Part shown: piece by piece, positions 7,298 through 56,248 of the stretch
Layout: each line of letters starts with the position of its first letter
How positions within the stretch are numbered: the first letter of the stretch is position 1
Origin: Octopus bimaculoides
Lineage: Eukaryota
Assembly (NCBI RefSeq): GCF_001194135.2
Contig: NC_068984.1
Span: 140,667,352 to 140,723,908 of the forward strand
Direction of reading: 5' to 3'
DNA: 56,557 bases
Translations under genes and position numbers: made by a program
Notes under the pieces: model-generated
Seen by the model: the letters and a program-made list of their open reading frames with translations, nothing else
Told to the model about the DNA's origin: nothing
Database searches by the model: none

Positions 7298-7749
7298 TTT
7301 AATAATAATAATCCTTTCTACTAAAGGCACAAGGCCTGAAGTTTTGGTGGAGGGGAGTAGTCCGTTATATCGACCCCAATGTGTCACTGGTACTTCATTT
7401 ACTGATCGCGAAAGGATGAAAGGCAAAGTCGACCTCGGCAGAATTTGAACTCAGAACATAGCAATGGGTGAAATACCGCTTAGCATTTCGCCATGCAGGC
7501 TAGTGATTCTGCCAGTTCATCGCCTTAAATAATCCTGTCTAGTGAAGGCACAAGGCCTGTAATTTTGTGGGGAGGGGACTAGATGATGTAATCGACTCCA
7601 GTGTTTCACTGGTACTTATTTTATCGACCCCGGAAGGATGAAAGGCAAAGTCGACCTCGGCAGAATTTGAACTCAAAATGTAAAGACAGATGAAATGCCG
7701 CTAAGCATTTCGCCCGGTGTGCTAACCACCCTGCTAGCTCACTGCCTTA
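7086..7749 (-). mobile_element. Three head-to-tail copies of SINE family D (core GAAAGGATGAAAGGCAAAGTCGACCTCGGCAGAATTTGAACTC on +)
   Basis: Copies at about 7086-7258, 7312-7527 and 7531-7749 with an (AAT)n spacer. Other copies at about 4262, 5652, 27555, 28931, 45508, 49310, 55795 (same orientation) and 53545 (opposite). Confidence 0.75.
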
Positions 7750-11690: not shown

Positions 11691-12331
11691 TAATTGTGTG
11701 TGTGTAGTTAAGGANNNNNNNNNNNNNNNNNNNNNNNNNNNNNNNNNNNNNNNNNNNNNATATATATATATATATATATATAACGTGTGCAAAGTAATAA
11801 AACAATTTGTATATAGTCAAATTATAACAAGGTTAGTACAAGTGTATATTAAGCAAACAATAATTGTAGACAATGTATAATATTATTAAAAAAAAAGTGT
11901 GTATAGTAACAATGTAAATGTGAAATAATTCCACAGTCACTTCAGATGTTTATTTAACTTGAATATTACAACAATAATGTTCTTCGTGGTGGAGGTTATA
12001 CCTCAACCCTATTTTGTTATAAATATATATATCAATGCATATATCCGTGTATGCATATATGTGTTAGTTATGGTATGTATGTATGTATGTATATCAAATT
12101 GACTGAGTACACAGCATTCTGGACAGCTGGAAAGATTCCAGACAGATATTAGAGGAAATAAATCATTAACGATGCATTTAATAGTAATAATTATGACAGC
12201 CAATGTAAAAGAAGTTATGCAATGCCTTAGAAAATTGTATAAGGTGGTCAGGATTTGACTATTATAATAACGTGTATTTCTGGTGCATATGAAATATGTG
12301 TGTGTGTATGTGTGTTTGCATACATTTTTAT

Positions 12332-12540
12332 ATATGAAGCAGTGTTGAAAAGTTCCTGGCTTTAAGGGTATCACAAAGGTCCTAGTTGGAGGCTTAACAT
12401 TTGGAGTTCTTTTACAGGGTTTAGAAAAACTGAAGGACCACTGACTCTGAGAGGGAAATATGTTGAATAAAACCATAACTGATCCTCCTGTATTTTCTTT
12501 TACCCAAAGCCAGAAACTTTTCAGCCCCACCCCTTCGTAT
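12332..12540 (+). mobile_element. mariner-derived MITE
   Basis: Imperfect TIRs (TGAAAAGTTCCTGGCTTT / AAAGCCAGAAACTTTTCAG) around a transposase 3'-end remnant. Confidence 0.6.
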
Positions 12541-13682
12541 ATATGTACACACACACACACACACACATTATTCAGGTATTAGTTGAATTTTTTTAAAATT
12601 ACCTCATACACTGTAGTATTTTGTACTTCTATTTTTTTGTTTATATCATATTATTAAATTTATTTCATTTCAGTTCAGTCTTACAGTCCATATTTTAATT
12701 TATAAAAAAAAAAAAAAAATAGAAAATTACAATTTCTAATTTTGCAAAACAGCAAAATTGTTTTTTTCTTTTGGCAAGGGGAAACAAGGGTGGGGGAAAT
12801 GTAAATCAATTGTGTTGACCTCAGTAATTGACTGATGTTTTATTTTATTGTCCCTTTAAAGGATCACTCGGTAAAGCTGACCCCGATAAGGTTTTGAACT
12901 CACAACATACATAACTAAATACAAGTTTTTAATCTATCGTTTTACAGAGTCTGCTACTCCTTTGCCCTAATACATTTGTCGAAGACACAAGTAAAAAGAT
13001 TAGATTTTCATGGAAGTCTCTACAATAGAACTGTTTTTCTCTTGAATATTCTGTGTATGTTCCCACAAGAATAATTAAACAAAAATCTTCAGTATTTAGA
13101 TCCTGACCACAGCCTTATTTCATAAATATATTGCTGTTTGTCCACTCTGTCTGTCTGTGCCATTCTTCTCTCATAGGTCAATTTCTGTAATGACCCAGTC
13201 ATGAGGACAGATTTTAGAATCTTCCTATAATTGGAACTGATTAGAGAAAATTTGGTAATTCCGAACCATTTATTTTTAAGATATTTTTTTTTTTAGTATT
13301 TTAAATTTCTTTTTATCTATTTTCATTCAATGTTTAAACAACAATTAAACATGCTTACAGAGCCATTAAGTGTTGTTGTTATTTCTCAAGATTAGTTCAC
13401 CGATCACTTCTAAAAGAACACAAGGCTAAGTATTTAGAAGTGGCCAAGGACAGGGAGGAAGTAAATTGGTAAGGTAGGCAGTTAGCTAGCTAGGCAGGTA
13501 GGCAAATAGCTAGGAAAGTAGGTAGGTAGATAGATGTTCCAGGTGTATTTACATAACTGAGTTAAAGCCAATGGTGGCAGAGGAACTTTGGTCAGGTTCT
13601 AAGTTTCCATATCTGAAAGAGAATTGTTATAGGAGTATATAGGAAGAATCAGAAGTTTATGTGTGAAAGAATTGTCTGATAA

Positions 13683-13737: not shown

Positions 13738-13782
13738 TCAAGACTGGCTATCTTTGGACCAGTTGGTGTCCTTTAACTTCAC
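13738..13782 (-). CDS. COBL: COBL-like last coding exon (VKLKDTNWSKDSQS*)
   Basis: Strong polypyrimidine tract and acceptor (ttttttctgtttcttttcag); phase 0. Completes the WH2 LKGV motif; TGA at 13740-13738. Confidence 0.75.
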   Translation of the reverse strand: MKLKDTNWSKDSQS

Positions 13783-15923: not shown

Positions 15924-17531
15924 ATTTGAAAATGCTTTGTTTGGTTGACGTATCAGATCATTATTTAACATCCATTCTCCATGCCAGCATGGGTTAGATG
16001 GTTCAACAGGAACCAGCATTTCGAGAGCAAATAATTTCTAGTAGTTCTCTCTGTTTTATGTGACTCTCCTAATTACAATACTATGTTGTGTTTTGATGGA
16101 GATTCTGTTGTTCAGGTACAGGTTCAGTAACTAGGGAAACAGTCCTGAGCTGAAGACCAAAGTGGAATGTGGCTGCCATGTTGAATGAACATAAAGCAAA
16201 TAAATAATAACCAAAACAAGTCTTGCTACAATTGAAAAAAATAAATAAAATAGAATAGAAACCATTGTGACTGTAAATGTAATTAGATTAACCACTTTAT
16301 TAGGGGAGAGATTTTATTGATTATTGAGATGTAAACATGTTTTTACATACCTTGTATTTGATTAACTATAGGTCTCAGATCAATAATGCACCTTCGGGAT
16401 TCCAGTACTCAAGTTACTGGAGATGAACTAGGAATAGGTATTGATGATGATGATGATGATGATTGTGGGGCTGGTGGTAATGGTGGGGGCAGAGACAAGG
16501 ATTGTGGTGATTGTTGTGATGATGGTTGGTGTAACAGTGTTAGTGGTAAATGAGTCAGTAGATGTAGTAGTGATGTTGTGGTGATTGTGCTAGTGTTCTG
16601 TACAAAGGCACAGGTTAGCATTAAAAAAAAACAAACATAAGGTGTGTGTGTGTATATATATGTATATATATATATATATCGACGCAGGTATGGCTGTGTG
16701 GCAAGATGCTTGCATCCCAACCATATGGTTCAGGGTTCAGTCCTACTGTGTGACNNNNNNNNNNNNNNNNNNNNNNNNNNNNNNNNNNNNNNNNNNNNNN
16801 NNNNNNNNNNNNNNNNNNNNNNNNNNNNNNNNNNNNNNNNNNNNNNNNNNNNNNNNNNNNNNNNNNNNNNNNNNNNNNNNNNNNNNNNNNNNNNNNNNNN
16901 NNNNNNNNNNNNNNNNNNNNNNNNNNNNNNNNNNNNNNNNNNNNNNNNNNNNNNNNNNNNNNNNNNNNNNNNNNNNNNNNNNNNNNNNNNNNNNNNNNNN
17001 NNNNNNNNNNNNNNNNNNNNNNNNNNNNNNNNNNNNNNNNNNNNNNNNNNNNNNNNNNNNNNNNNNNNNNNNNNNNNNNNNNNNNNNNNNNNNNNNNNNN
17101 NNNNNNNNNNNNNNNNNNNNNNNNNNNNNNNNNNNNNNNNNNNNNNNNNNNNNNNNNNNNNNNNNNNNNNNNNNNNNNNNNNNNNNNNNNNNNNNNNNNN
17201 NNNNNNNNNNNNNNNNNNNNNNNNNNNNNNNNNNNNNNNNNNNNNNNNNNNNNNNNNNNNNNNNNNNNNNNNNNNNNNNNNNNNNNNNNNNNNNNNNNNN
17301 NNNNNNNNNNNNNNNNNNNNNNNNNNGCATAGTATTCAAATATAAGGGGCATTTTCCTTGTTTCTGCCTGTCTCTGTCTCTCTTGTTTACTCTTGTGGGT
17401 AGATATATGTGTGTGTGTGTGTGTGTGTGTGTTTAGCATTGTCCTTTAATGTCTGTTTTCCATGCTGACAAGCTGGAAAGCTGCACCAAGTTCCAGTCTG
17501 GTTTGGCTTGGTTTGTAAATAAATGTATATC

Positions 17532-17576
<45 letters not shown>

Positions 17577-18349
17577 GTGCGTGTGCATATGCTGGGGAGG
17601 GAATGGTTCTACAAGTATCGACTCATCTTTATTTTTAAATGATAAAAACTCTAAAGGAGAACTAGTCATGGTGTCTGGTGTCAGCAAAAGAAATAAAAGT
17701 ATAGTTTGTAAGTCACAGAGAGAAGTAGAATCTGACATTTTGGTGTCATTCCCTCACTTGGGGCAGAGAGAGAGAGAGGGGGGGGGGTAATGTCCTGAAA
17801 TGTCAAATTCCATTTCTTCCTGTGACATATAAACTTATCCAGGTTGACAAACTTTGCTTTATTTCAAAAGCTTGAGTATCTAAGGAGGAGGAAAAAGGAA
17901 CTATAGAACAATTATAAGAGAGAGGGAGAGACTTGGAGTGGTTCAGGAGACAGAAAGATTACAAACCTTAGATTAACTGCCATCTTTATATACAGTGTTC
18001 TTGAAGAGGAGTGAGAGAGAGAGAAAGATCAATATTAATGGCTTCAGACCAATATTAATGGTTTAGGGATTAACCATGAACATGAAAGAGTAATGGCTGG
18101 TAAGGATGCCATCAACAACAATGATGCCTGATAATAACAACTAGACATACAAACAGATATACCAGGGTTTCTATAGATTGTTTTGGTTCCTATTTTACAC
18201 AGATGGACTCTCCAAGCCATCCGATCTTCAAAAAATCATAGTATATTTTTATAATTAAAATATTAGGAATGGTATAAAAAAAAAAAATTAACATATTTTG
18301 TGTATTTGTAGAAGTATGACCAATCTATTGCAGATAAATTTTTGCAACA

Positions 18350-19377: not shown

Positions 19378-22300
19378 CCCTTTCAGATTACTCCGGCTTG
19401 AATTTTTGATTTCCATTAATAATTGCTCACGAGGTGTGAGTTCTGGTTCTGGTAACTTCCGTTTTGGTTTTGGCGCTACTGAGGGTGGCTTCAATACAAC
19501 CATAGCAGGAACAGCTCGGACAACACCACTAACTTCTGTATCATTTTGTTTTCGAAAGAAATTCACCTCTGTTTTTATTGGAGGAGAATTCTCTTTTGGT
19601 GGTCCAACTTTTTTCAGATTCACTGTAAATGGAAGTTTTGGTGGAGGGGTCCCTGGTTTCGGAGGAACTGGTGGAACTGAATTGTTTGAACTTTTGGTTT
19701 TTGAGTTTTCTTTCTGCTTCTGTGATTTGTTACTGAATGTCTCTGGTGGAGGAGGAAAGTTTGTAATAGGCTTTATTTGGGGTTTAATCTCTTTGGGTGA
19801 AACTGGTCTTTGTGGAAGTTCTGGAGGAGGGGGCAATATACCTTTGGATGAACGCACCTTTGTCTGAGGAGATGATGGTGATGATCTCACTTGATTCTTC
19901 AAATTCTCTGGAAGGTGTTTCAAGCCCTCTTGGAAACTTTGAATTATCTCCTCTTGGCTTTTTAGCATCTGAGCCATTTTGTCTGCAAGAGGGTCTTCTT
20001 TAACATTGGAACCTTTGTTTAATATAGAAGTCTTGTGATCTTCAAGTTGTTGCTGCCATATTTCCAACTGCTCTTGCATAGCTTTCTGTTCTTCAGTGTG
20101 AGAACTAGGACCAAGGTGAGTTTTCAACTTGGCTTCCCACAAAGATATTTGTTCCTTCAGCAAATTTTGTTCCTGTACAGCTAATTTCTTTCGAATATTC
20201 AAACGATGCTGGATTGCAATCAGTTGGCGGTGCCACAGATTCACCTGTTTCTGCAAAAGGTCATACTCTGTTTCTGAATAATAGGAATTGCCATCAGTTT
20301 GAGACAACTTGAGACGTGCAAGATCAATCTGTTTTTCCAGAATCTCTTGTTCATCCGTGATATACTCAGCATTGTAATCCTCATCAAGGCTGCTCATTTT
20401 TGTATACAAGTCAATTTGACGGTTGACGATTGCGTTTTCCTGAGCAGTTATTTCAGGGTTGACATCTTTGTCAGTTTTAGAGAGTTTTCTCTGTAACAAT
20501 TTTATCTGTTTCTGAGGAACATTTTCTTTTTGATTTTGACTCTTCTCATAATCTAATAAGTCATTTTGCCAAAGTTCTATCTGTTGCTGAAGAATTTCAC
20601 TCTCAATTTTCCCCAGCTCATCAGTGTCTTTTTCTGTCTGGCACTTTTCTCGTTTCTTCTGCCAGACCATAATTTGTTGGTTTAGGATATCCTGCTGAAC
20701 AGAATGTGGTAAGGGGGTCTCTTCTACAGTAAACAGTTTTAGTTGTTTTTTCCAAATAGAAATCTGTTCTCTCACCTCAGACTCCTCCTCTCCAATAGAT
20801 GTGTCAGAGTTTCGTTTCATTTTGGTGTACCACAAATCAATATACTTCTTTAAAATGTCCTGCTCTGCAGCAAGGTGAATTATCTTCTTGTCTTTGTTCT
20901 CTACAAGACCCCTCTGCCAAAGTTCAATTTGCTGCATCAAAATCTCCCGTTCTTCCTCAGTGTACCCTAATGTGTTATTCTTGATAATGTCAAGATGGTC
21001 TTGCCACAGACGGATTTGATCTTTCTGGAGTTCTTCATTAAGTGATTTGAATTTTATCCTCGTCTCTTTCTTTTCTCTCTTCACATCAAGCCACCGCTGC
21101 CAAATATCAATCTCTTTAGCTAACAACTCTGATCCTTTCAGCTCTGTGCCTCTGAAGTTAGTATCAATATTTTGGTGAGCAAGTTTATCTTGCCACAATT
21201 CTATCTGAAACTTTAGAATATTTTGTTGCTCTTCATTATATTTCTGTAAGGATTCTTTCCTTTCTTGCATGGCTGTTAGCTTCTGCTGCCAAAGATCAAC
21301 CTGTAACTTTAAAAGGTCCTGTTCAATAGGTTCCACTGTGGAATTGGTTTCATTGCTTTTCTGTAACTTCTTCTGATAGAGGTCAATTTTATCACAAAGA
21401 ACATCCATTTCTTCAGCCAAGAAAGTCTCAGATTCAATATCAATGCCATTCAGCTTTTTATTCCAGAGTTGAATTTCTCTTTGAAGAAGTTTCTGTTCTA
21501 TCACCAGGAAATCATTATCAGAGTTCTGATTGTCTCGTGTTTGTTTCTTCCAGATGTCAATTTGTTTCATCACAAGGTCTTCACTTCCAGAATTCTTTTC
21601 ATTCATCTTATTCTGCCACAATTCAATTTGTTGTTCTAAGATGTCCTGCTCCACTTTGCTATCTTTATCTTGGTGGCTCTGGACATCCTGCAGTTGTGAG
21701 TGCCAAACATTCACTTGTTCTTTCAAGATCTCTCTCTGACTAGAAGGATCTCCATCCTTGTACCAATGAAGTTGCTTCTGCCAAACAATCAGCTGTCTTC
21801 TCAAGATATCTTGTTCTTGGGCACTGAAAGAATGTCCTGCAAATTTCTTATCCTTCAAATTTTTCTTCCACACTTCAATTTGGTGCCGAAGAAGATTCTG
21901 TTCTTTGGTGCTACTATCTGTGTCAGAACCTTTTTTATCAAGCTGGCTCTGCCACAGATCAATCTGTTCTTGAAGAACCTCTCTCTCTTCTATAGTGTAA
22001 AGGCTGGAACTTTTCTCAATGACTTTAATTTTTTGTCTCCAAACTTGAACTTGTTTCTTCAAAAATTCGATTTCTTGTTCTTTGTATTTCTTTGCACCAT
22101 CACTTTGGCGTTCTTTTGCAGACAACTTCCTTTGCCAAAGTTCTATCTGTTGCTTCATAACTTTCTGTTCAAGCAGTCTAAACCCAGAAGAATCTGCTAC
22201 GTTGAGTTCTTTCAATTGTTTGTTCCATTGGTCAACCTTCTCTCTGAGTTTCTCTTGTTCTTGTGCCGTGTACAAACCACTATTATCATTCAGGTGTTCT

Positions 22301-23261
22301 TGCAGTTGCTTCTGCCAGCGTTCAATCTGCTTCTTCAGATTTGTTTGAGCAGCTAATGGAATGCTGTCTTCTTGAGTAGATTCTGAGTCAATAGTATCTG
22401 ACTCGGAGTCAATTGACAGAGTGTACCCGTCCAGCCTTATCTTTGGAGACCTCTTCTCAGTTGATGGGGAAAACTTTTTGCTTTCTTCTTTCACTTCCTG
22501 TTTCCTCTGATTCTCAATCATTGGGGAGCCACGATAATCCAAAGATTTCCGATCCTCTTTTGTCAACACCAGTTCCTCTTTAGGACTGTTCATGTACTGT
22601 GCTAATTCAGCAGCACTTGAAGACCTACTTAGTTCTAACGAGGGACTACTTTCCAACACTGGCCGGCTAGCATTATCATGAGAAACCGACATGACTATTT
22701 CCTCTTCAATTCCATTGACCTCATGAGTTTCCACCTCATTTTCAACAACATGATTCATATCGGGCACAAATGATTCCATGCCATATGGAGCCCCTGTTTC
22801 AACAGTTTCTACAATTTCTGGTATCATGCGCGTTTCCTCACTAAGTGTGTCACCATTTGGCAACTGGTCATGAACGCCATTTATGTTGTAATCTTCTGAC
22901 ATACCAACTGTGGTAAAGCTGCCTTCTGACGAAATACTCTGCCTACGCCGATTCCCATTCTTGAAAGATTTCGGTGAAAGCGTTTCTCCCATTGATATAT
23001 TAGAGGTGACAGTGTCCGTTGTACTGAAGTCATCATCTGTGGCGCTCGCAATTGAGTTGCGATGTTTTCCAAGATATATTGCTGTTCCCTCAGTAAGTTC
23101 ATTTCCAGTGGTCAAGCGAGGTCTTGGTGACTGACTTCCATCAGGATTTCCTAAATTATGCACAGGTGTTGTCGGTCGGAAATTTTTTGCCTGTTCAGCT
23201 GTTATATTGTTGCTATATTCAACGAAGAGTCCCATGTCTGACTGCAATTCCTCTGCTACAA
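19378..23261 (-). CDS. COBL: COBL-like giant exon (3884 nt): acidic region, about 27 Trp helical repeats, Pro-rich region, N-terminal part of WH2
   Basis: 1292-aa ORF in the track. Acceptor ttttag before 23261 (phase 1), donor gtaagt after 19378 (phase 0). Ends TPREQLLMEIKNSSRSNLKG. Confidence 0.93.
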
Positions 23262-23322: not shown

Positions 23323-23365
<43 letters not shown>

Positions 23366-23375
23366 NNNNNNNNNN

Positions 23376-23415
<40 letters not shown>

Positions 23416-24200: not shown

Positions 24201-25224
24201 NNNNNNNNNNNNNNNNNNNNNNNNNNNNNNNNNNNNNNNNNNNNNNNNNNNNNNNNNNNNNNNNNNNNNNNNNNNNNNNNNNNNNNNNNNNNNNNNNNNN
24301 NNNNNNNNNNNNNNNNNNNNNNNNNNNNNNNNNNNNNNNNNNNNNNNNNNNNNNNNNNNNNNNNNNNNNNNNNNNNNNNNNNNNNNNNNNNNNNNNNNNN
24401 NNNNNNNNNNNNNNNNNNNNNNNNNNNNNNNNNNNNNNNNNNNNNNNNNNNNNNNNNNNNNNNNNNNNNNNNNNNNNNNNNNNNNNNNNNNNNNNNNNNN
24501 NNNNNNNNNNNNNNNNNNNNNNNNNNNNNNNNNNNNNNNNNNNNNNNNNNNNNNNNNNNNNNNNNNNNNNNNNNNNNNNNNNNNNNNNNNNNNNNNNNNN
24601 NNNNNNNNNNNNNNNNNNNNNNNNNNNNNNNNNNNNNNNNNNNNNNNNNNNNNNNNNNNNNNNNNNNNNNNNNNNNNNNNNNNNNNNNNNNNNNNNNNNN
24701 NNNNNNNNNNNNNNNNNNNNNNNNNNNNNNNNNNNNNNNNNNNNNNNNNNNNNNNNNNNNNNNNNNNNNNNNNNNNNNNNNNNNNNNNNNNNNNNNNNNN
24801 NNNNNNNNNNNNNNNNNNNNNNNNNNNNNNNNNNNNNNNNNNNNNNNNNNNNNNNNNNNNNNNNNNNNNNNNNNNNNNNNNNNNNNNNNNNNNNNNNNNN
24901 NNNNNNNNNNNNNNNNNNNNNNNNNNNNNNNNNNNNNNNNNNNNNNNNNNNNNNNNNNNNNNNNNNNNNNNNNNNNNNNNNNNNNNNNNNNNNNNNNNNN
25001 NNNNNNNNNNNNNNNNNNNNNNNNNNNNNNNNNNNNNNNNNNNNNNNNNNNNNNNNNNNNNNNNNNNNNNNNNNNNNNNNNNNNNNNNNNNNNNNNNNNN
25101 NNNNNNNNNNNNNNNNNNNNNNNNNNNNNNNNNNNNNNNNNNNNNNNNNNNNNNNNNNNNNNNNNNNNNNNNNNNNNNNNNNNNNNATATATATATATAT
25201 ATATACATACTAGATGTACCTGCT

Positions 25225-26552: not shown

Positions 26553-27487
26553 AACAATAAACTAGATGAGGACAAATATCTGTCAATTGTAAATAATGTA
26601 CATAATTCCTCATCTCTTAAATATAGAGCTGAACCCATTTGTTGTTTGTTTTTCCACCCGTCCCATTGCAACTGATCTTTGTCTATAAAAAGATAGTCTC
26701 TCTGTTTTTCAGCCTTTTGAATAAGATGATAAAGATTTAGAAATGCAATATTTCTGATTCATATCTTATTTTAAATAAAATAGTAGTGTTCCTCTTGAAG
26801 AAAAAAAAAAAAACACTCAAGTACCCCGTGATTCAAAAAATATCTCATAAAAATATAAGAATTTCTTTCTTTCAGTCTCCAGGATTTGAAATTTGTATCA
26901 ATGATTAAAGGAAAAAAAAAGAAAGTAAGGCAAAAGCTGGTAGCGACCGATGACTCTTTGAAGTGTCAACATTTCCAATTTCATTTTTTTTTCTTAAAGG
27001 GGGAAATGACTATTTTATTTGAAATCTTTATCAATTTAATCAAATGACAGGAAAACNNNNNNNNNNNNNNNNNNNNNNNNNNNNNNNNNNNNNNNNNNNN
27101 NNNNNNNNNNNNNNNNNNNNNNNNNNNNNNNNNNNNNNNNNNNNNNNNNNNNNNNNNNNNNNNNNNNNNNNNNNNNNNNNNNNNNNNNNNNNNNNNNNNN
27201 NNNNNNNNNNNNNNNNNNAAATGGAGTAAAACGCATATGTTAAATGAATTCGAAACATATGTTGGAAATAAAAGAATTCATTTAACATGCATTTTACTCC
27301 ATTTACTAAATTTGTATATTTACTCAAGTACCCAAAATAACAAGGAGTTTCTACCTCATAAACAGGAGTTACACCACAGTCATTTTGTGATCTTTGCTAC
27401 CCTGGTATCTATTAACCAATTTATTTTGTCGAGGTTAATTATTAACTTAGAGAAAATAAATACATATAATATATATATATATATATC

Positions 27488-35150: not shown

Positions 35151-36128
35151 AATAGCAAAGAAATAGGAGCTTCAAAGTTGAAGTTAATTTGTTAGAAAAA
35201 TGAAAGGAATAGGTGAGAATTCAGAGAAATTCAAATTTTCAAGATTGTCTTGAAGATTTTGCACAAGCAACACCAAAATCAGTCAAAATACAAGAATATC
35301 GAAAACTTGTTTCTCTGTCGTGTTATTGTATAATGAAAGATCACATGACATCTAATGGTTTAAAGGCATATTTGAAGGTAATCTTGGATTACTGGATTAC
35401 CAAACCAATTCCACTTATACTCTATTACTGAAGAATTACACTTAAGAAAATAGAAAAGTTTCCATTATAAAAAAAAACAAAAAAACATTTGCTTGATGTG
35501 CTAAAAATAACAGGAGAATCTGCTCAAAATCTCATCCCAGTAGCTTTGATAAAAAAGAAACATTGACCATGTAGAACTGGACACACCACAGCTGAAAATC
35601 GAGATATTATGGTCATGGCTGGAAAGGCTGATCACTGGTATCTTAGATCAAATGAGCCTAAGCTATAGCTTCTCTACCTATCAAACCAATAATGTAGTTT
35701 CGAAGTGGTTACTCAGCCTGGGGTTAAACAATGACAAAAATGAGTCAAGCTTCTATGTGGTTGCTCAACCAGTTATGACCTTTAGGCCAGCTGCAGTCTC
35801 CAGACCAGTAGTAAATTTTAGCCCAGCTATGATTTATTCCCAGGCCAACTGTGACCTCTCTTCAGTTAGGTGTGGTCTCTACACTAGCCATGATCTTCAG
35901 ATAAGCTCTAACTATCCAGGCCATGGTCAAATGTGACTGTTAGTCAAGCTGTGGTCTCCAGATCAGTTGTGATCTTCAATGGGATTAGTCTATATTTTCA
36001 AAGTAAAAGAGACAAGCACTCTTCCTTATATTGTTATACCTTTCCAAAGATCTGACTCTAGAAATAACTGTTGTTGCTGTCGGCAACTTAGAGGGAAAGG
36101 AAGTGACGCTGTCCAAAGTTTTACTTAC

Positions 36129-36524
36129 CATTGACTGGAGGGGGAACATCAGTAGCGGCCAAAGACAGAGAATCTTCAGCAATGCCAACACTCTTGTCAA
36201 CCTTATCATACTCCATTACTGTGATGGGACTTGGGACATTGGATGGGGGTTCAGAAGGTGGTGGTGTGAGGGGAGGAGGAGGTGCAACAAAGGAACACGG
36301 ACGCTGTATTTTAGTCAGCTCTTCTAAACTATCAGACAGATCTGTTGCAGCTAGGGTGGAAGCGTCTGCAGGGTGTGCCATTCCATCAGTGCCATCTACT
36401 AAGGTGCATGCATCGGGTGCAGGTGTGTCAGCAATTAAGTCAGGGTCTTCAAGATTCTTCTCATCATTTTTGAAGTTATATTCTAGAACATCAGAATACA
36501 TTGTGTGTTCTTTGAATGAGGAGC
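36129..36524 (-). CDS. COBL: COBL-like exon, acidic/Pro-rich (GSSFKEHTMYSDVLEY...VPPPVN)
   Basis: Acceptor atttccag, donor gtaagt; 396 nt, phase 1-1, in frame with ORF 36121-36501. Confidence 0.8.
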
Positions 36525-36769
36525 CTGGAAATATGGGAAATTATAGTTGAACGAAAGACAAGACACAAAGAGCAGTGATTGGCAAATTAGGAGGGGAAGC
36601 AAGAAGAGAATAAATTGAAAAAGAAAATAGCTGTGTGGATATGTCTGAGTATATAAACTGATTTCTCAGTTCATACAAACAAACAGCAAATGCACAAGAC
36701 TGAGAAATCCAAAAACAATACCATAGAAGAACAAGCACCTTTCTGAGTGGTATCCTTAGTAAAGCTACA

Positions 36770-44058: not shown

Positions 44059-44728
44059 CTGGTGGTGGTGGAGGAGCTGGTTTACGCTTTTTATAAGGAC
44101 TAGCGTACATATCATTTGCAGTTTTTTGTATATGTATACCAGATAAGGTTTTGCTTAACTGGACACTTCTCTTGGATTGTGGTACCTCATGAATTTCTGC
44201 AACATTCAATGATCTTTGTGTAATGTGTTTATCATTGTTGCTCTCCATGTATGTGATAGAATCAGTTCCAATCTTGTTGATTTCAGACTGCGTGTGAAGA
44301 TGGGGTGGTTGAGAGTGAAGTTGTGGTTGTTGTTGTTTTACATTGGGTGGGCTCTGAGGAGAAGGATAAAACTGGTGTGCATCAGGGGAAGGAGGAGTGA
44401 TATAGCTGCCAGTTGCAGAAGCTGGTTCAATACGACCACTCGATTGCGAACTGGATCTTGAGTCATAAGCTGGCTGGTTACTGTAACCCAAAGTGTGGCC
44501 TGTGTTTTGGAAAGTCTCACCTTGGGAAGAGCTGGAGCCAGGCCGTGGTAACGTGTTTGATGCATAGCTCTGAACTGAATTAGCAACACCAACAGGCACT
44601 GTGGATGTTGGTGGCGGTGGTGCAGGCTTGCTCTTGGTAGATTTCTTTGGCTTCTTCATGTAATTTTCAAGGCTCTCTGTGACAGGCGAAAACATTGAGG
44701 AAGGCCGCTGTTTACCTGAGTTTCCCGA
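44059..44728 (-). CDS. COBL: COBL-like exon with two Lys-rich PAPPPP motifs
   Basis: Within ORF 43991-44755. Acceptor tttcccag, donor gtaagt; 670 nt, phase 0 to 1. Encodes KSKPAPPPP and KKRKPAPPPPP. Confidence 0.85.
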
Positions 44729-45124
44729 CTGGGAAAAATAAAAATGATAAACCAAACGTAAGATTATTTGAAGAATTCAAAAATGGCTCATTTGTGTCAT
44801 ATTGCAAGTATTGAAACACAGTGGTTGTATTTGCAGTGATTCCAGTACTTCAAGACAGAGCAGCCAAATTTTCTATAAATCATACTTTGAGTTTTAAAAT
44901 AAATTGTAGGACATGTTGGATAATCTAGTCATACATACTTTGAATAAAATGAAGTGGTCACGGTTGGAATGTTTTTGATTCTAAGTGACCTAAATCAGAA
45001 CCAATCTGTAGTTAAATAACAGCAACAAAGCTGTTGATTAGTGATTGAATCTAAATCGCTAAACATCAGCCAACGAAAGAGCTTTTATCATGATTACTTA
45101 AAGAAAAACAAAAACAAAATTGTG

Positions 45125-45435: not shown

Positions 45436-48400
45436 TTCACTAATAAATACTTAACCTGTTAGGAAATAGCAACCAAGTTTCCAGCATCTGAAAGAGAAGA
45501 CATACATCTTTTCTACTCTAGGTACAAGGCCCGAAATCTTGGGGGAGGAGGCCAGCCAATTAGATCAACCCCGGTACACAACTGGTATTTAATTTATCGA
45601 ACTCAATACTTTGACTTTGAAAAAAAAAAAGCCATGAATATTGACAATGGTCATAAGATGGATTATTGGCTGAATTGATTTATAAAGATCCATTCTAAAC
45701 AGAATGAATATGAAGGTGTAAAGTTGAAGAACCATATTTGTTTAAAAACGTTATATAAAGGGTCAAATCATATTAAGAAACAATAATACCAGGGTCTATG
45801 TCAAATGTTTAGAAAACAATAAGGTGTATATGAGATTATAATATTTAAATAAATTGATTAGACACTGTTAGATATAAATTTCAATTTTGTAACTTTGATA
45901 ATCTGCATTATAGAAGATATGCTTGAAGAAAGAAGCTGGAATATCACTAAAAAGAAATTGGAGAACTCTTACCAAAAATCTAAGTAAAATATTTTATTCT
46001 AATTGAAATAGTTTGTTGATCATTGATGGGATTGAACCTACATTCTATGAATGAGAGTAAGTTTACTATTTTTTGAATAACTGGTAACATGACCCCATGT
46101 TTACTTTAAGTAGAGTTTTAACACTTTATCAGTAGAAATATCTATTTGAAAAATCTACACAAAGTGGCAACTATATAACTAAGATCTACTCAAAGTGTTA
46201 TGGAGTGAAAAGTGGTAAATGAGAAGTGAAAATTTGCATAAACCAAGAAATGTCTTGAAATGCAGACTAAGTGATAAATGTGTGATAAAAATGTACACGA
46301 CGCAGTGAACTATGTGTGCTAAATGTTAATACAAAATCGTGAATGTGATAAGTGTATGTGTCACAAATCTTTGTAAGGTGGTAAAAAGATTGATGTGGAA
46401 AAAATAACGGCAGAGTTACACAGAAGTAAATGACAAAGCCAAAAAGTGGTAAACTATTTCATAGCATACAAAAAAGGAAGTCATCCAGTTTTCGATAGTA
46501 TCAGCCAGTTCGCTGAAAGAAGTTGGTGATAATGAGCGCTAAAAGAAAGAGAAAAATCAAGAGGTCTCTGTTAAGATTTTCAGAATAGAAACGTATTATT
46601 AGTTATGAATCAATATCTAAGTTGTCAGCTTACTTCTATCTTCATATTTTGACAAGAGGCAGGAACATTTTTGTTTTTCTATAAATTAGCGAGAATAGAG
46701 TTGGCAATAGTTGTGATCACGATAAGGTTCATTTCTCCTTTCCAGACAAGAGGGATTGATACGGTTTATGAGACACTGAGGGAATTTGCAGGTGAGAAGA
46801 ACTGGGAGAAGTATTTTATGTGGGAGATGGGATATAATAGAGATGGTGAGAGGATAAATGGATGGGTATACCAGAGTGGACATCCAGCAAATTCAGAAGA
46901 CCAGAGATCACTGTAACAATACTAGATGAGGCCGTTGTAGTTCAGATGAGGCTGTTGTATTTGTTGTAGTTCAGAAATTACTGTAGGGCCAACAGGAGAG
47001 GCTGACAGAAGAAACAATGGGCCAAAGGGTGAAATGTTAATATGCCATGGACGATCTTCTTTCAGATGTAATGTAAGATCTGTGTGTGTGTGTGTGTGTG
47101 TAGGGACACTGTCCCCAATATGTGAACCGTGCATCTCACTGGAGCAGGTCTGAAGTAGTTTCCAAGCCTGAAGAGGAAACCAGTACCAAGCAGCAGCGTA
47201 TGTTGAAGCAGAGACAGAAGAGGAGGTAAAGATGGGACAAAGCACATCAATGGAATAAGTGGTTAAAGTCTGTCAGTAAATTCCTGCCAGTCAGTCAAAT
47301 GGGTTTCCTTTAGATATCATCAAAGATCCTTACATTCAGTAGTTTACAAATTCTGAAGAATTTAGAATATATTTTTCTTTACAGTTTCTTCTTTTAACCT
47401 TTTAACACCAAAATTAGCAATATTCATTAAAAAGATATATTTGTTAGTCTTTTTGTTTTTCGGTTTATGAAAGAGGTATGTCAAGTGTGGAAAAATTAAA
47501 TTTTGTCAGATATTTTTTTATTGATGCTAATCACTGGGACTGTGGACATACTAGGACACTGCCTTCAAGAACTTTGAGTTGATTTTACACTGATAAAATG
47601 TACGCACACATAACTGTAAGATCAACAAACTAAAATGAAGAACTCAATATTAGTTTTAACATTTTTTCATGCTGTAATAAATTTATAAATTTGTAATAAT
47701 CAATAGATCTATTGGGTTATCCCATAAACGATGGGTTTTTTTTAATTGCGTGAACTAAAAGTTGGAAGTGGACAGGATAAACTGCTTGCATCAACTTGCT
47801 ATAAAAGAGCTGACCCCCTTTGGAAGAATTTGAACTCAAAATGTAGTGGATACAACCAAAGTCATTTTGTCTAGTAGTTCTACCATTTAAAAAATTTTAA
47901 TCTTTTCATGGCCCTTTGCAAAGCCTCTGAGACTTTATTGAGGGATTGAGGTAGGAAGGGAGATATTTTCAAAGCAGAGACTCGGCTTGAATACTTGGAT
48001 TCTTTTGCCAAAAACAGCAAAGGTGTCAGGGGTGATGGATTAAATCTACTATTCAAGTAGGCCATGCTGGGATTTGAACTCAGAATACAAAGAGACAGCA
48101 CAAATACCATAAGGAATCATCACTTGCAATGCTGTAATGTTTCCATTGGTGCACTGTCTTAAGCCGGTGAAGGTGCATAGTTTAGTTAGTGTGTTTGGCT
48201 TATGATCATGAAGTCGGGGGTTCTATTCCAAGTGGCACCTTGTATCCTTAAGCAAGGCACTTTATTTTACATTGCTCCAGTTTACTCAGCTGGCAAAAAA
48301 AGTGAGTAGTAGCAATTGCGAATCCCAACATTATTACAAAATGCAGCATAAAAGCTGGTCTTTACATGATTTGAACCCAGAACTTAGACACACAAAACTA

Positions 48401-51660: not shown

Positions 51661-51766
51661 TGGAAGAAATACACCGTCATAGAAACAACCAGAGGTGGCA
51701 TCAGGAAGATTGATATGAGAAGGATTAAGAAATAAAATAAGTGGAAAACAGGGGTCAAATACTTAC

Positions 51767-51948
51767 TGATTTGTCCTTTTTGTCTTTTCTTAAGAAAGAG
51801 AAGAAGCCTTTCTTTCTATGAGAATCTCTTGGGGGTGGCATGTGGATGTAGTTTTTTGATGGTCCCTGGCTTTGGTTTGACTTTGTTGGGTCTGCAATCC
51901 AACTGGTTGCAGACAGATCTGGCACAGACATGTAATGATCAGTTGATG
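51767..51948 (-). CDS. COBL: COBL-like exon (ASTDHYMSVPDLS...HRKKGFFSFLRKDKKDKS)
   Basis: Acceptor ttttcag, donor gtaagt; 182 nt, phase 1 to 0, open frame not reported in the ORF track. The GFFSF motif follows the Ubl domain in Cobl-family proteins. Confidence 0.85.
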
Positions 51949-52503
51949 CTGAAAATTATAAAGAATGGTAAAGCTATTGGACACTGGCAGTAAATAGGGA
52001 GTTGCAGACTTGTGGATGTTGGAGACTATGACAAAAGAGTAGAAGATGACAATGATGATGGGTGATTTATTATGATAATGGTCTTGATGAAGGTAATGAC
52101 AATAGCTGTCACAGACGATGATGATATTCTCGTTAACGGTAGCGATACTCTGATAATTATGATAATGACAGTAAAGTGGAAGTCATTAGGGAATTATACA
52201 GAAGTTCTCTTGGTATTTGTTGTACTGAGGTCAACGTTTCCCTTCAACCTGTTGGGGGGTCAATGAAATAATCCCAGATGGTGGACTGGCAGAATTAAAA
52301 GAGTTTCAGAATGTCTTGCACTTTCTGTTCTAGGTCTTTACATTTTGAGAGCAACACCAGTGATGTCATTGTGCCAAGCTGTATCAGTCTTAAAAATGGC
52401 AGCCTTTCTCTTGGACAATTTCAGTGACTGACTTGGAGAAAAGAGACTTGCATGCAAAAATTATTGCCAGGCTTCTACTCACCTCATGCTGACATATACA
52501 GTA

Positions 52504-54468: not shown

Positions 54469-54475
54469 AAATTAC

Positions 54476-54704
54476 CTTTGTGAACAAGATTGAGCTCATG
54501 CTGTTGAAGACCTAATTCTTGGAGTGTATATTTGAGATTTATCACAGATCCAGGTTTGTCTGGACGTTGCAACACAAATACATTTGGGTCGAGGTTCTTC
54601 TCTTCACACACGCTCTGGTGCAACTCGTGCAAGGGATGGTTAGCGCTCATCCTGCGCACCACTTTCTGAGCATGTGGCAAGTTTATGGTCAGTCGATACG
54701 TCAT
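54476..54704 (-). CDS. COBL: COBL-like exon: ubiquitin-like/Ras-binding-type domain (MTYRLTINLP...HELNLVHK)
   Basis: Acceptor ttttcag before 54704, donor gtaatt after 54476; 229 nt, ends phase 1. Pattern RLxINLPxxQKxVxR...PLxEL...C..K.LDP fits the Cobl ubiquitin-like domain. Confidence 0.85.
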
Positions 54705-56248
54705 CTGAAAATAGCAGTAAAATGACTTGTTAAAAAAAACATCATCATTATTAATTTATACATAATCTCATCAATGTTTTAATGCCCACTGTCCCACGGG
54801 TCAGACAAAACTGCTGAAGCAGGTTTTCCTATGGTCAACAACCCTCACCAGTTTCCAAGCAAAGTAATATTTTCTCCAAGTTATATATAATTAATGAAGT
54901 GCCCAGACATACTTTTAAAGAGGATTATAAACAGATGACCTGTTTTATGAATAGAGGCTTCTGTTTCCAGTCAGGAGAATTCATAACTGTGCAACAAGCT
55001 TATCCCAGTTTCTGTCTACCAAACTCACAAGTGGTATAACAGAAGGCACCAACTGTGTACACACAGTGAACACTCCCTAATCCACATGATTTCCAAAGAG
55101 AACTTCTCAACCACACAACTATGAGTGTGTGTGTGTGTATGTGTGAGGAGGGGGTATAACATCCATGCTTAAGCGGGGATAAATATTACTTCTCGGTAAT
55201 GAAGGTGGGTATCAGAAGAATCAGCATCATAGATAAAGGCAAGAAGTGGGTGAAGTGATGATGGCAAAATTCAAGCTTGGGGTACACCAAATTTGATAGA
55301 CTGTGGCTCTGAGGAAGCTCTATCTATACACAAAGTGATGGTGGGATTTGACTGGAAGCAAATGATCTCTGGGGATGAGATGAGCTGGAAGGAAAGGGCT
55401 GACCAGAACAGAAAGGGGGAGAGAGGAAGTGAGGAAAGCAAGACCCGGGTTGTCCTCTTTCAACCTTCTGCAGTCGCTGTGAATGGATATCAGTGGAGCA
55501 AGCTAGCAGGATTGATAGTAGCAGCTGCTAACATTAGGTGATACGGGTAGGACGTGTTCTGACTTAGCACAGCTGGACAGTCAACGAGAAGCAGATGAAC
55601 TGTATCTCATTTCCTTGCATTACAGTTCCCTCATACCACATGATCAAAGAGATGAGACAGGAAAAGAGCCCCGAGGCAAACAGTTTTGCTAGGAGTTCAC
55701 TTATTGGTTTTAGTAAGTATTGTGTCTCTTAATGTAAACCCATAACAACCTAACTGTCTTTAGATATTAACAAGCACTAGAGTGTTGATAATACTGGTTC
55801 TAAATTTTGGCACAAGGCCAGCAAGTTCAAGGTGGGGGTATAATTTGATTACATTGGCCACCAATGTTCAACTGGTACTTATTTTATCGATTCCCTCCCC
55901 AGAAAAGGATGAAAGGCAAAGTTGACCACACTGGAAATTGAACTCAGGACATAAAGATAGATGAAATGACGCTAAGCATTTCGCCCGGCTTGCTAATGGT
56001 TCTTCTAGTTTACCACCTTCAATGGTGTTGTTAATATTGGCAAAAATCTTTGATGGGGGTGTTCCAGCATGGCCACACAGTACAACGAAAAAGAAACTGG
56101 TAAAACAATATACATACATATATGCACAATACAGGTAGACACAAACATGCACATAGACAGACAGACAGACACAGGTATGAGGAGACACACATTTAGCATC
56201 TGTGCAAGAAGGAAAACAAAAGCCACACCAGAAACAACAGAAAACTAA

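What the first reader, a model, noticed from the sequence alone, without database searches (positions are those of the whole stretch)
20044..22350. About 27 tandem Trp-containing helical repeats in a single 3.9-kb exon of a Cobl-like protein
Seen: ORF residues about 300-1068 contain 27 units (mean about 28.5 aa) with consensus EQx(I/L)LxxQI(D/E)LWQx(K/Q)L, e.g. EQDILEQQIELWQNKM, EREILMQQIELWQRGL, EQNLLKEQISLWEAKL. Trp is kept in 23 of 27. Linkers are polar and variable, often with an aromatic residue then an S/T-x-x-E helix N-cap (YTAQE, YTIEE, FSAQE, YTEEE). There is no obvious DNA-level tandem identity and no stops, suggesting an old, selected array. Established: vertebrate Cobl/COBLL1 have a mostly low-complexity middle region; I know of no such repeat there. 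Inference: a lineage-specific solenoid or multivalent binding array between the Ubl region and WH2.
Basis: partly seen in the sequence, partly recalled or inferred. Interest (0 to 1): 0.8.

Follow-up and report, generated by a model that had tools for sequence, protein, structure and literature searches.

The report
27-helix Trp repeat in octopus Cobl-like
The octopus version of the actin regulator Cobl-like carries 27 conserved copies of a short tryptophan-containing helix that bivalves and gastropods have only once, a real and undescribed repeat whose job is still unknown.

Summary
On the minus strand, one ~3.9-kb exon (about 23261-19378) of Octopus bimaculoides LOC106877933 encodes 27 tandem units at 22353-20044. 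The gene has a Cobl ubiquitin-like domain and a single C-terminal WH2. The mean period is 29.0 aa, the consensus is E-Q-[DE]-[IL]-L-x-x-Q-I-[DE]-L-W-Q-[KR]-[KQ]-L, and Trp is kept in 23 of 27 units. There is no DNA-level tandem repeat.

The array is old and selected. O. sinensis, O. vulgaris, Argonauta hians and a more distant unidentified species all have exactly 27 units with nearly identical unit lengths. Cores are 72% identical in the distant species, against 38-48% for linkers and flanks, with no indel in any core.

The unit matches no Pfam family and no PDB sequence or fold. Among 1.84 billion protein representatives it occurs only in these orthologues.

New here: the last unit aligns with a single W-helix (LQxQFSxWQxQLxxNQxLL) present once in six bivalve and gastropod Cobl-like proteins. 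The array is therefore an amplification of an ancestral motif, and it carries a trace of a 12-unit block duplication.

AlphaFold gives one helix per unit at modest confidence, not a continuous coiled coil. Function is inferred only. I favour a fixed-length, self-packing helical rod between the targeting and actin-binding ends; a multivalent docking array is the main rival.

The parts
19378..23261 (-). Large coding exon (~3884 nt) of the Cobl-like gene LOC106877933. It encodes P0001 aa 493-1787: an acidic/Ser-rich lead-in, the 27-unit array, a second conserved helix, a Pro-rich region and the first part of the WH2.
   Evidence: tblastn of P0001 gives 100% identity over 23262-19375. Acceptor TTTTAG| and donor GGG|GTAAGT were read directly.
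20044..22353 (-). The array itself: 27 tandem units, measured core-to-core (P0001 aa 796-1565). The 18-aa unit cores lie at 22300-22353, 22210-22263, 22120-22173, 22024-22077, 21937-21990, 21853-21906, 21766-21819, 21688-21741, 21601-21654, 21535-21588, 21448-21501, 21361-21414, 21274-21327, 21178-21231, 21085-21138, 20989-21042, 20902-20955, 20815-20868, 20737-20790, 20647-20700, 20554-20607, 20479-20532, 20389-20442, 20302-20355, 20218-20271, 20122-20175, 20041-20094.
   Evidence: 27 HMM domains, 384 bits, against at most 10.3 bits in 1000 shuffles. In the AF2 model every Trp lies inside a predicted helix that usually starts about 13 residues before it.
20020..20094 (-). Unit 27 (EEQKAMQEQLEIWQQQLEDHKTSIL). 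It is the positional orthologue of the single W-helix of bivalve and gastropod Cobl-like proteins.
   Evidence: MAFFT of the C-termini of 9 species. An HMM of the six non-cephalopod motifs scores unit 27 best (10.8 bits) and hits 18 units in register, and 0 of 1000 shuffles reach that. hhalign of A1 against A7 gives E=4.9e-5.
19912..19983 (-). Second conserved helix after the array (DKMAQMLKSQEEIIQSFQEGLKHL). It aligns with the Q-rich helix of other molluscs (QLKAQQEMMLQMQQSMQLL).
19630..19839 (-). Proline-rich stretch (ILPPPPELPQ ... GTPPPKLP) between the helices and the WH2.
   Evidence: Read from the translation. Vertebrate Cobl-like has an Abp1-SH3-binding Pro-rich region before its WH2 (PMC5748978); the link to that region is an analogy only.
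19378..19470 (-). Basic patch plus the first part of the WH2 (KPKRKLPEPELTPREQLLMEIKNSSRSNLKG). The motif is completed by the last exon.
   Evidence: Profile A5 of 7 species hits 4jhd_C 'Protein cordon-bleu' at E=7.3e-6, and also Cobl WH2 peptides and Spire.
13741..13782 (-). Terminal exon VKLKDTNWSKDSQS*. It completes the LKxV of the WH2 and keeps the V.V..T.W tail shared with other molluscs.
17976..17999 (-). Alternative terminal exon NTVYKDGS*. It replaces the Val of LKxV.
   Evidence: It is used in P0006 and P0008. Argonauta and the unidentified species have equivalent tails.
54471..54707 (-). Exon encoding the Cobl ubiquitin-like domain (P0001 aa 109-187).
   Evidence: tblastn. Pfam PF09469 matches aa 110-177 at 28.4 bits.
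44060..44740 (-). Exon for P0001 aa 268-492. It ends in the KRAP-like motif KKRKPAPPPPP.
51752..51949 (-). Exon for P0001 aa 186-251.
46470..46526 (-). Small exon for P0001 aa 251-269.

Best explanation
The feature is the central region of the octopus Cobl-like protein, an actin-assembly factor with N-terminal ubiquitin-like and KRAP-type modules and a single C-terminal WH2.

Shown:
- It consists of 27 copies of a ~29-aa unit.
- It arose by tandem amplification of one ancestral W-helix that bivalve and gastropod Cobl-like proteins carry once, next to a Q-rich helix and upstream of the Pro-rich region and WH2. An old 12-unit block duplication was part of this history.
- Copy number and unit lengths have since been frozen.
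- Each unit is predicted to be one amphipathic helix of about 18-27 residues that starts ~13 residues before the Trp, followed by a polar linker of 4-14 residues.
- The conserved residues E(-11), I/L(-8), L(-7), Q(-4), I(-3), L(-1), W(0), Q(+1), K/Q(+3) and L(+4) fill heptad positions c, g, d, a and e. Only the b and f positions are free to vary.

Inferred mechanism: the helices pack against one another, within one chain and possibly between chains, as the coiled-coil-like ancestral element probably did. This would give an elongated, segmented helical rod of fixed length. The rod would space, and perhaps oligomerise, the targeting end and the Pro-rich/WH2 actin end. Oligomerisation could let a single-WH2 protein bring several actin-binding sites together.
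For: Identity and context.

Reality of the repeat.

Frozen architecture:
- There are 27 HMM-detected units in every full-length model of O. bimaculoides, O. sinensis, O. vulgaris, Argonauta and the unidentified species.
- 21 of 26 W-to-W spacings are identical between octopus and the distant species, and the rest differ by 1-2 aa.
- Only 3 of 285 linker positions are gapped, against 22 of 303 and 38 of 222 in the flanks. No core position is gapped.

Selection:
- Core, linker, N-flank and C-flank identities are 98/94/94/97% (O. sinensis), 91/77/68/77% (Argonauta) and 72/48/38/47% (distant species).
- dN is 0.18 in cores, 0.41 in linkers and 0.60 in the N-flank, with saturated dS.
- Each unit keeps its own identity: 22 of 27 have their positional orthologue as best match.

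Conserved face: per-position orthologue identity is 0.70-1.00 at positions c, g, d, a and e, against 0.30-0.59 at b and f.

Ancestry. The ancestral motif has an invariant Asn in the a/d register (+7) followed by a Q-rich heptad helix, which are coiled-coil hallmarks (read from the alignment).

Structure:
- AF2 gives 24 helices for 27 units, with pLDDT 61.7 and pTM 0.40.
- The 9-unit fragment gives pLDDT 64.8 and pTM 0.48, with blocks at 74-86.

A fixed copy number and fixed linker lengths are what a cooperative folded rod predicts. They are not what beads-on-a-string binding sites predict.
Against: - No coordinates or PAE were available, AF2 confidence is only moderate, and the alignments were shallow (4-6 rows), so helix-helix packing is not demonstrated.
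- Foldseek finds no significant structural analogue (best E=0.14-0.2).
- About 31% of array residues are hydrophobic (ILMFVWYC). I judge that low for a globular fold and near the 2-in-7 of a coiled coil; this is my assessment, not a test.
- Trp at a core position in every unit, plus the near-invariant polar Q(-4) and E(-11), would also fit a specific ligand-recognition surface.
- Unit lengths vary from 22 to 32 aa, so the units cannot all be structurally equivalent as in a regular solenoid.
- There is no 2- or 3-unit periodicity.
- No experimental data exist for this protein (literature searches).
Confidence: 0.45

Rival explanations
1. Multivalent docking array. Each W-helix is an independent binding site for one partner, such as G- or F-actin, an EF-hand protein, or another cytoskeletal cofactor. 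The ancestral protein bound one copy, and amplification raised the valency to 27, for example to line a filament or to concentrate a cofactor next to the WH2.
For: - The motif L-x-x-Q-hydrophobic-x-x-W-Q-x-[QK]-L has been kept from bivalves and gastropods to cephalopods.
- Q(-4) is 100% identical and W 93% identical between orthologous units.
- Conserved polar residues sit in the middle of the hydrophobic face, which is typical of recognition helices.
- Linkers are polar, and 17 of 26 contain Gly or Pro.
- Vertebrate Cobl-like depends on bound cofactors, Abp1 and Ca2+/CaM, to work with one WH2 (PMC5748978).
Against: - Copy number is exactly 27 and linker lengths are frozen across all species seen, which is unusual for beads-on-a-string sites.
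- The cores have near-zero net charge, -5 to +4, unlike typical basic calmodulin targets.
- Pfam shows no similarity to WH2, RPEL, IQ, nebulin or Xin motifs.
- No partner is known.
Confidence: 0.3
2. Long dimeric or oligomeric coiled coil with skips. The array zips two or more Cobl-like chains in parallel, an extension of an ancestral coiled-coil dimerisation element.
For: - L(-7), I(-3), W(0) and L(+4) fall in an a/d pattern.
- The ancestral element has Asn in the a/d register and a following Q-rich heptad helix.
- 15 of 26 spacings (22, 25, 29 or 32 aa) would keep the conserved faces within 40 degrees of each other on a straight helix.
- Three linkers are predicted helical, fusing unit pairs 13-14, 15-16 and 25-26.
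Against: - Spacings modulo 7 are scattered over 0-6, so the heptad phase is not carried across units.
- AF2 breaks the chain into 24 helices with low-confidence loops.
- Most linkers contain Gly, Pro, Asn, Ser or Asp.
- Each helix offers only about two heptads of a/d core.
- Trp is a poor coiled-coil core residue (general knowledge).
Confidence: 0.12
3. Functionally neutral low-complexity or disordered spacer. A Q/E/K-rich expansion with no specific role, or an annotation artefact that is not expressed.
For: The composition is Q/E/K/L-rich, and Pfam finds nothing.
Against: - Cores show strong purifying selection relative to linkers and flanks, and no core has an indel.
- Unit-specific conservation and unit number are maintained although synonymous sites are saturated.
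- Spliced cDNA contigs contain the exon in the second species: P0011, P0014 and P0015 on contigs of 4.7-8.5 kb.
- All predicted isoforms in three Octopus species include the exon.
Confidence: 0.03

Closest known systems
Cobl-like (COBLL1) and the invertebrate 'ur-form' of cordon-bleu (Schultz & Terhoeven 2013, PMC3849942; Izadi et al. 2018, PMC5748978)
   Same: - It has an N-terminal Cobl ubiquitin-like domain, KRAP-type Lys/Arg-Ala-Pro motifs, a Pro-rich region before a single C-terminal WH2, and a long middle region.
- The WH2 profile matches the solved vertebrate Cobl WH2s.
- Orthologues in oyster-type bivalves and in gastropods are named cordon-bleu-like.
   Different: The middle region holds 27 ordered helical units (~770 aa) that are absent from the bivalve and gastropod proteins, which are ~1300 aa and have one W-helix. 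Nothing of the kind appears in the Cobl papers read or in Pfam. Whether vertebrate proteins keep the single W-helix was not tested.
Single W-helix plus Q-rich helix of bivalve and gastropod Cobl-like proteins (Argopecten, Mizuhopecten, Solemya, Mytilus, Haliotis, Lymnaea)
   Same: It occupies the same position relative to the Pro-rich region and WH2. It shares the key residues L(-7), Q(-4), hydrophobic(-3), W(0), Q/K(+1), Q(+3) and L(+4). Unit 27 aligns with it.
   Different: There is one copy rather than 27. The ancestral helix runs on (NQxLL) with an Asn in the heptad core, whereas most cephalopod units end 4-10 residues after the Trp.
Actin-associated helical repeat arrays (nebulin ~35-aa modules, Xin repeats) and spectrin-type rods with a conserved core Trp
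   Same: Many tandem helical modules sit in a cytoskeletal protein, and a Trp is conserved in each module, as in spectrin helix A and in Xin repeats (from general knowledge). Module number may set a length.
   Different: There is no sequence match to the Pfam models of these families. The period is 29 aa with one helix per unit, and there is no 3-helix periodicity. Foldseek shows no significant similarity; the alpha-actinin rod scores E=2.7.

Membership tests
Cordon-bleu / Cobl-like protein family | N-terminal Cobl ubiquitin-like domain (Pfam PF09469) | tested here: met
   P0001 aa 110-177 scores 28.4 bits against a gathering cut-off of 25, E=2.1e-6. The domain is encoded at window 54471-54707.
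Cordon-bleu / Cobl-like protein family | C-terminal WH2 actin-binding motif (LLxxI ... LKxV) | tested here: met
   The 7-species profile A5 hits PDB 4jhd_C 'Protein cordon-bleu' at E=7.3e-6, aligning to all three WH2s, and also hits Cobl WH2 peptides and Spire. The Pfam WH2 HMM itself gives no hit. That agrees with the difficulty reported in PMC3849942.
Cordon-bleu / Cobl-like protein family | One WH2 only (Cobl-like or ur-form) rather than three (vertebrate Cobl) | tested here: met
   Only one region of the protein aligns to the WH2 profile region. The repeat units are not WH2-like: Pfam and PDB searches with units found nothing.
Cordon-bleu / Cobl-like protein family | KRAP-type motifs that bind syndapin SH3 | not testable with these tools
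   KKRKPAPPPPP and KSKPAPPPP are present in the sequence. Binding was not assayed.
Known helical repeat families (spectrin, nebulin, Xin, RPEL, IQ, apolipoprotein, TPR/HAT, HEAT/ARM) | Significant match to the family profile | tested here: not met
   Pfam-A at E<=10 on the exon and on the full protein shows none of these families. With 54 units scanned singly, no family is hit by more than one unit. The PDB sequence search with the unit profile has a best E of 0.056, a phage DNA polymerase.
Canonical continuous coiled coil | Unbroken heptad register over the whole region | tested here: not met
   W-to-W spacings modulo 7 take all values from 0 to 6. AF2 gives 24 separate helices with 3-12-residue breaks. 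17 of 26 linkers contain Gly or Pro.
Alpha-solenoid | Regular stacking of structurally equivalent helical units, with similarity to known solenoid folds | tested here: inconclusive
   AF2 gives pLDDT 62-65 and pTM 0.40-0.48. Foldseek against the PDB finds no hit below E=0.1 and TM is at most 0.44. Coordinates and PAE were not available to inspect the packing.

The most novel reading that the evidence does not exclude
The W-helix is an ancient, so far unnamed functional element of invertebrate Cobl-like proteins. The lineage leading to octopods multiplied it into a 27-module array of fixed length. The array would act as a molecular ruler or as a 27-valent actin- or cofactor-binding scaffold, giving a single-WH2 protein a new way to build or template long actin structures.
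Probability: 0.2. Interest if true: 0.7.

Novelty: new variant of a known kind. Interest (0 to 1): 0.5.

Why it matters
- It defines a new repeat family, absent from Pfam and the PDB, and seen among 1.84 billion protein representatives only in this orthologue group.
- It traces the family to a single conserved helix in other molluscan Cobl-like proteins, an element the Cobl papers read here do not mention.
- Single-WH2 Cobl-like proteins need extra parts to act on actin. A frozen 27-module array next to the WH2 is therefore a natural experiment in how such proteins gain function.
- It is a clean case of motif amplification followed by very long stasis in copy number and spacing.
- It gives concrete constructs for biochemistry: one unit, three units, the whole array, and Trp-to-Ala variants.

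Tried and rejected
- **Shifted-window alignment for AF2.** An alignment of overlapping 8-unit windows (A2) was meant to give AF2 more depth. MAFFT staggered the overlapping windows by true identity (731 columns), so I dropped it and used non-overlapping 9-unit windows instead (A3).
- **Protein search with the N-terminal Ubl region** returned nothing, not even the protein itself. One search had also missed Argonauta and O. sinensis. That tool's word index is patchy, so absence in it proves little. The exhaustive search and the search with P0011 were the informative ones.
- **P0004**, the third hit of the exhaustive search, is a tandemly mis-assembled reverse-transcriptase ORF. It matches only the first half of the profile (positions 1-17) and has no Trp, so it is spurious.
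- **Units as degenerate WH2 helices.** The registers differ: E-Q-L-L-M-E-I in the WH2 against E-Q-x-I-L-x-x-Q-I in the unit. No profile match was found, so I rejected the idea.
- **Spectrin-like three-helix bundles.** I considered this because 27 and 12 are both multiples of 3. There is no lag-3 similarity (p=0.89), the fused helix pairs are not 3-periodic, and the Pfam spectrin model gives no hit. Rejected.
- **Calmodulin target.** The cores are not basic. This is unlikely, not excluded.
- **Naming the second species.** Searching papers for its run accessions (ERR12374250, SRR30931883, SRR8281668 and others) found nothing.
- **dN/dS.** No ratio could be given for cores because synonymous sites are saturated, with pS 0.73-0.92.
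Full report
**What is at the locus**

The window is Octopus bimaculoides genomic DNA. The finding lies on the minus strand, in an open frame running from 23295 to 19369. The translation is 100% identical to UniRef A0A0L8GBB2 / XP_014782497 (P0001, 1801 aa), named 'Cordon-bleu ubiquitin-like domain-containing protein', gene LOC106877933. A longer RefSeq isoform also exists (P0005, 2547 aa).

tblastn places the P0001 exons as follows:

| P0001 residues | Window coordinates |
|---|---|
| 109-187 (Cobl Ubl) | 54707-54471 |
| 186-251 | 51949-51752 |
| 251-269 | 46526-46470 |
| 268-492 | 44740-44060 |
| 493-1788 | 23262-19375 |
| 1788-1801 | 13782-13741 |

The big exon has a pyrimidine-rich acceptor (TTTTAG|) and a GGG|GTAAGT donor. 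It is about 3884 nt long.

**Checking the observation**

Anchoring on the Trp column gives 27 units.
- The W-to-W spacings are 30, 30, 32, 29, 28, 29, 26, 29, 22, 29, 29, 29, 32, 31, 32, 29, 29, 26, 30, 31, 25, 30, 29, 28, 32, 27. The mean is 28.96 aa.
- Core-to-core the array is P0001 aa 796-1565, window 22353-20044.
- Trp occupies the anchor in 23 of 27 units. Units 12, 22, 23 and 24 have Y, L, Y and A.
- The most informative columns are E(-11), Q(-10), D/E(-9), I/L(-8), L(-7), Q(-4), I(-3), D/E(-2), L(-1), W(0), Q(+1), K/R(+2), K/Q(+3) and L(+4).
- An aromatic residue at -15 occurs in 12 of 27 units. An N-cap residue (S/T/D/N) at -14 with Glu at -11 occurs in 8 of 27.
- Tandem Repeats Finder sees no tandem DNA in the array.
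- An HMM built only from the other species' units finds 27 domains and 384 bits in the octopus exon. The best of 1000 shuffles scored 10.3 bits.

**Conservation**

The array has exactly 27 HMM-detected units in every full-length model of O. bimaculoides, O. sinensis, O. vulgaris and Argonauta hians (P0003). The same holds for an unidentified species known only from public read sets: P0002, P0011, P0012, P0014 and P0015, from runs ERR12374250, SRR30931883, SRR8281668 and others.

Over the exon the octopus protein is 79% identical to Argonauta and 53% identical to the unidentified species. Argonauta is 51% identical to that species. The unidentified species therefore lies outside the Octopus+Argonauta group. 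I infer it is another cephalopod lineage, but I could not name it.

Between octopus and that species:
- 21 of 26 spacings are identical, and the others differ by 1-2 residues.
- Synonymous sites are saturated, with pS 0.73-0.92.
- dN is 0.18 in cores, 0.41 in linkers and 0.60 in the N-terminal flank.

The same conservation gradient appears at every evolutionary distance:

| Compared with | Core | Linker | N-flank | C-flank |
|---|---|---|---|---|
| O. sinensis | 98% | 94% | 94% | 97% |
| Argonauta | 91% | 77% | 68% | 77% |
| Distant species | 72% | 48% | 38% | 47% |

No core has an indel. Only 3 of 285 linker positions are gapped, against 22 of 303 and 38 of 222 in the flanks. Units keep individual identities. 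22 of 27 have their positional orthologue as best match, and the non-Trp anchors of units 12, 22, 23 and 24 are shared by Octopus and Argonauta. There is no concerted evolution.

**Transcription**

In the unidentified species the exon occurs on unspliced genomic contigs, where it reads on into ...LKGVSFSSLLFF. It also occurs on cDNA-like contigs of 4.7-8.5 kb. There it is joined upstream to the Ubl-encoding exons and downstream to short terminal exons (...LKG|SATYKNEPI and ...LKG|VQIHRFWTW).

**Is it a known repeat?**

- Pfam-A at E<=10 finds nothing in the exon. In the full protein it finds only the Cobl Ubl domain.
- With the 54 units of two species scanned one by one, no family is hit by more than one unit.
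- The unit profile (A1) finds nothing significant among PDB sequences.
- An exhaustive hmmsearch of 1.84 billion cluster representatives finds only P0002 and P0003, with 27 stretches each. The third hit is a spurious reverse-transcriptase concatemer without Trp.

The repeat is therefore confined to this orthologue group in the data available. Papers mentioning the gene, or cordon-bleu in cephalopods, were not found.

**Where the unit came from**

A search with the full-length transcript of the second species also returned Cobl-like proteins of about 1300 aa from Argopecten, Mizuhopecten, Solemya, Mytilus, Haliotis and Lymnaea. They match only the Ubl region, so they have no array.

Aligning the C-termini of nine species shows a shared layout. 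One helix, QQExLxxQYxxLQxQFSxWQxQLxxNQxLL, is followed by a Q-rich helix, a Pro-rich stretch, a basic patch and the WH2. Cephalopod unit 27 (EEQKAMQEQLEIWQQQLEDHKTSIL) aligns with the single W-helix. The helix after the array (KMAQMLKSQEEIIQSFQEGL) aligns with the Q-rich helix.

Four tests support this:
- The cephalopod unit HMM has its top hit on that W-helix in all five non-cephalopod proteins tested, although each score is weak.
- An HMM made only from the six non-cephalopod motifs hits 18 array units in W-to-W register. Unit 27 scores best at 10.8 bits.
- 0 of 1000 shuffles reach either the best score or the summed score.
- hhalign of the unit profile against the non-cephalopod motif profile gives E=4.9e-5 and probability 68%.

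The array is therefore an amplification of an ancestral single motif, in a lineage that includes octopods and the unidentified species.

Similarity between units is raised only at lag 12, with p<0.0005 in octopus and 0.02 in the other species. The rare 32-aa spacings recur at that lag, in units 3/15 and 13/25. This points to an old 12-unit block duplication.

**Family membership**

The Cobl Ubl domain passes Pfam's threshold. The Pfam WH2 model does not see the C-terminus. A 7-species profile of the C-terminus does hit the solved vertebrate Cobl WH2 domains (4jhd_C, E=7.3e-6, all three WH2s), Cobl WH2 peptides and Spire. With one WH2 the protein matches the 'ur-form'/Cobl-like architecture described by Schultz & Terhoeven (PMC3849942).

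**Structure**

AlphaFold2 was run on units 10-18 with 6 rows, giving pLDDT 64.8 and pTM 0.48. It was also run on the whole array with 4 rows, giving pLDDT 61.7 and pTM 0.40. Both runs predict one helix per unit.
- Each helix usually starts 13 residues before the Trp and ends 4-10 residues after it.
- Loops of 3-12 residues have low confidence.
- Three pairs with 32-aa spacing (13-14, 15-16, 25-26) fuse into helices of about 52 residues.
- Foldseek against the PDB gives no significant match. The best hits are E=0.14-0.2, to BAR-domain or SMC-arm-like long helices.

The spacings modulo 7 are scattered, and 17 of 26 linkers contain Gly or Pro. A plain continuous coiled coil is excluded.

On a helical wheel the conserved residues occupy positions c, g, d, a and e, with orthologue identity 0.70-1.00. 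Positions b and f are at 0.30-0.59. A polar stripe E(-11)/Q(-4)/K,Q(+3) runs between two hydrophobic stripes, I(-8)/L(-1) and L(-7)/I(-3)/W/L(+4).

**Interpretation**

Shown: the identity of the gene, the reality, age and selection of the array, its origin from one ancestral helix, and one predicted helix per unit.

Inferred: what the helices do. I favour a self-packing, fixed-length segmented helical rod, possibly also mediating oligomerisation, for three reasons:
- Copy number and every linker length are frozen although linker sequences drift.
- Five of seven heptad positions are constrained.
- The ancestral element looks like a coiled-coil-type association module, with Asn in the a/d register and a Q-rich heptad helix next to it.

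The main rival is a 27-valent docking array for actin or a cofactor. It is favoured by the invariant Trp and the conserved polar residues on the face. Vertebrate Cobl-like also depends on bound cofactors (PMC5748978). The tools here cannot separate the two readings, because no coordinates, PAE or complex prediction were available.

**Verdict**

The repeat family is undescribed, and the protein family and gene are already annotated. I rate it a new variant of a known kind, of moderate interest (0.5). It is a tidy evolutionary story with a testable structural and functional question, but it does not answer a long-standing problem.

Noticed in passing
window 36127-36645 (-): An open stretch encodes ...DASTLAATDLSDSLEELTKIQRPCSFVAPPPPLTPPPSEPPSNVPSPITVMEYDKVDKSVGIAEDSLSLAATD.... 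It is 55% identical to Argonauta P0003 aa 1221-1388, and the core motif RPCSFVAPPPP is also present in bivalve and gastropod orthologues. It is absent from the P0001 and P0005 models, so it is probably an alternative exon inside the 21-kb intron.
   Followed up: partly
window 17976-17999 (-) and 13741-13782 (-): There are two alternative terminal exons after ...SNLKG. VKLKDTNWSKDSQS* completes the LKxV of the WH2 and keeps the tail shared with other molluscs. NTVYKDGS* replaces the Val and so may give an isoform with a weakened WH2. Equivalent alternative tails occur in Argonauta and in the unidentified species.
   Followed up: partly
window 23324-23414: A (CA)45 microsatellite, interrupted by a 10-N gap, lies only about 60 nt upstream of the big exon's splice acceptor. 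CA repeats near splice sites can influence splicing. This was not tested.
   Followed up: no
window 20044-22353 (-), units 1-27: Unit similarity is raised only at lag 12 (p<0.0005 in octopus, 0.02 in the second species). The rare 32-aa spacings recur at that lag, in units 3/15 and 13/25. This indicates an old 12-unit block duplication, making the array about 2.25 copies of a 12-unit block.
   Followed up: yes
window 16755-17326, 24201-25186, 27057-27218, 40520-41229 and smaller runs: Assembly gaps (runs of N) lie within the introns of the gene. They create long artefactual 'ORFs' of X in the ORF list.
   Followed up: yes
window 12009-12566 (-): A 185-aa ORF lies in the region downstream of the last coding exon. 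It has no Pfam match and is probably chance or repeat-derived.
   Followed up: partly
window 7307-7714 and 37758-37869: Intronic or intergenic tandem repeats: a 222-bp unit present 1.8 times, and a perfect 26-bp unit present 4.3 times. They are unrelated to the coding repeat.
   Followed up: no
P0024-P0030 (non-cephalopod mollusc orthologues): Database names for the Cobl-like orthologues are inconsistent: 'titin-like' (Mizuhopecten), 'protein piccolo-like' (Haliotis) and 'unnamed protein product / WH2 domain-containing protein' (Lymnaea). All share the Ubl, the RPCSFVAPPPP motif, the W-helix and the WH2.
   Followed up: partly
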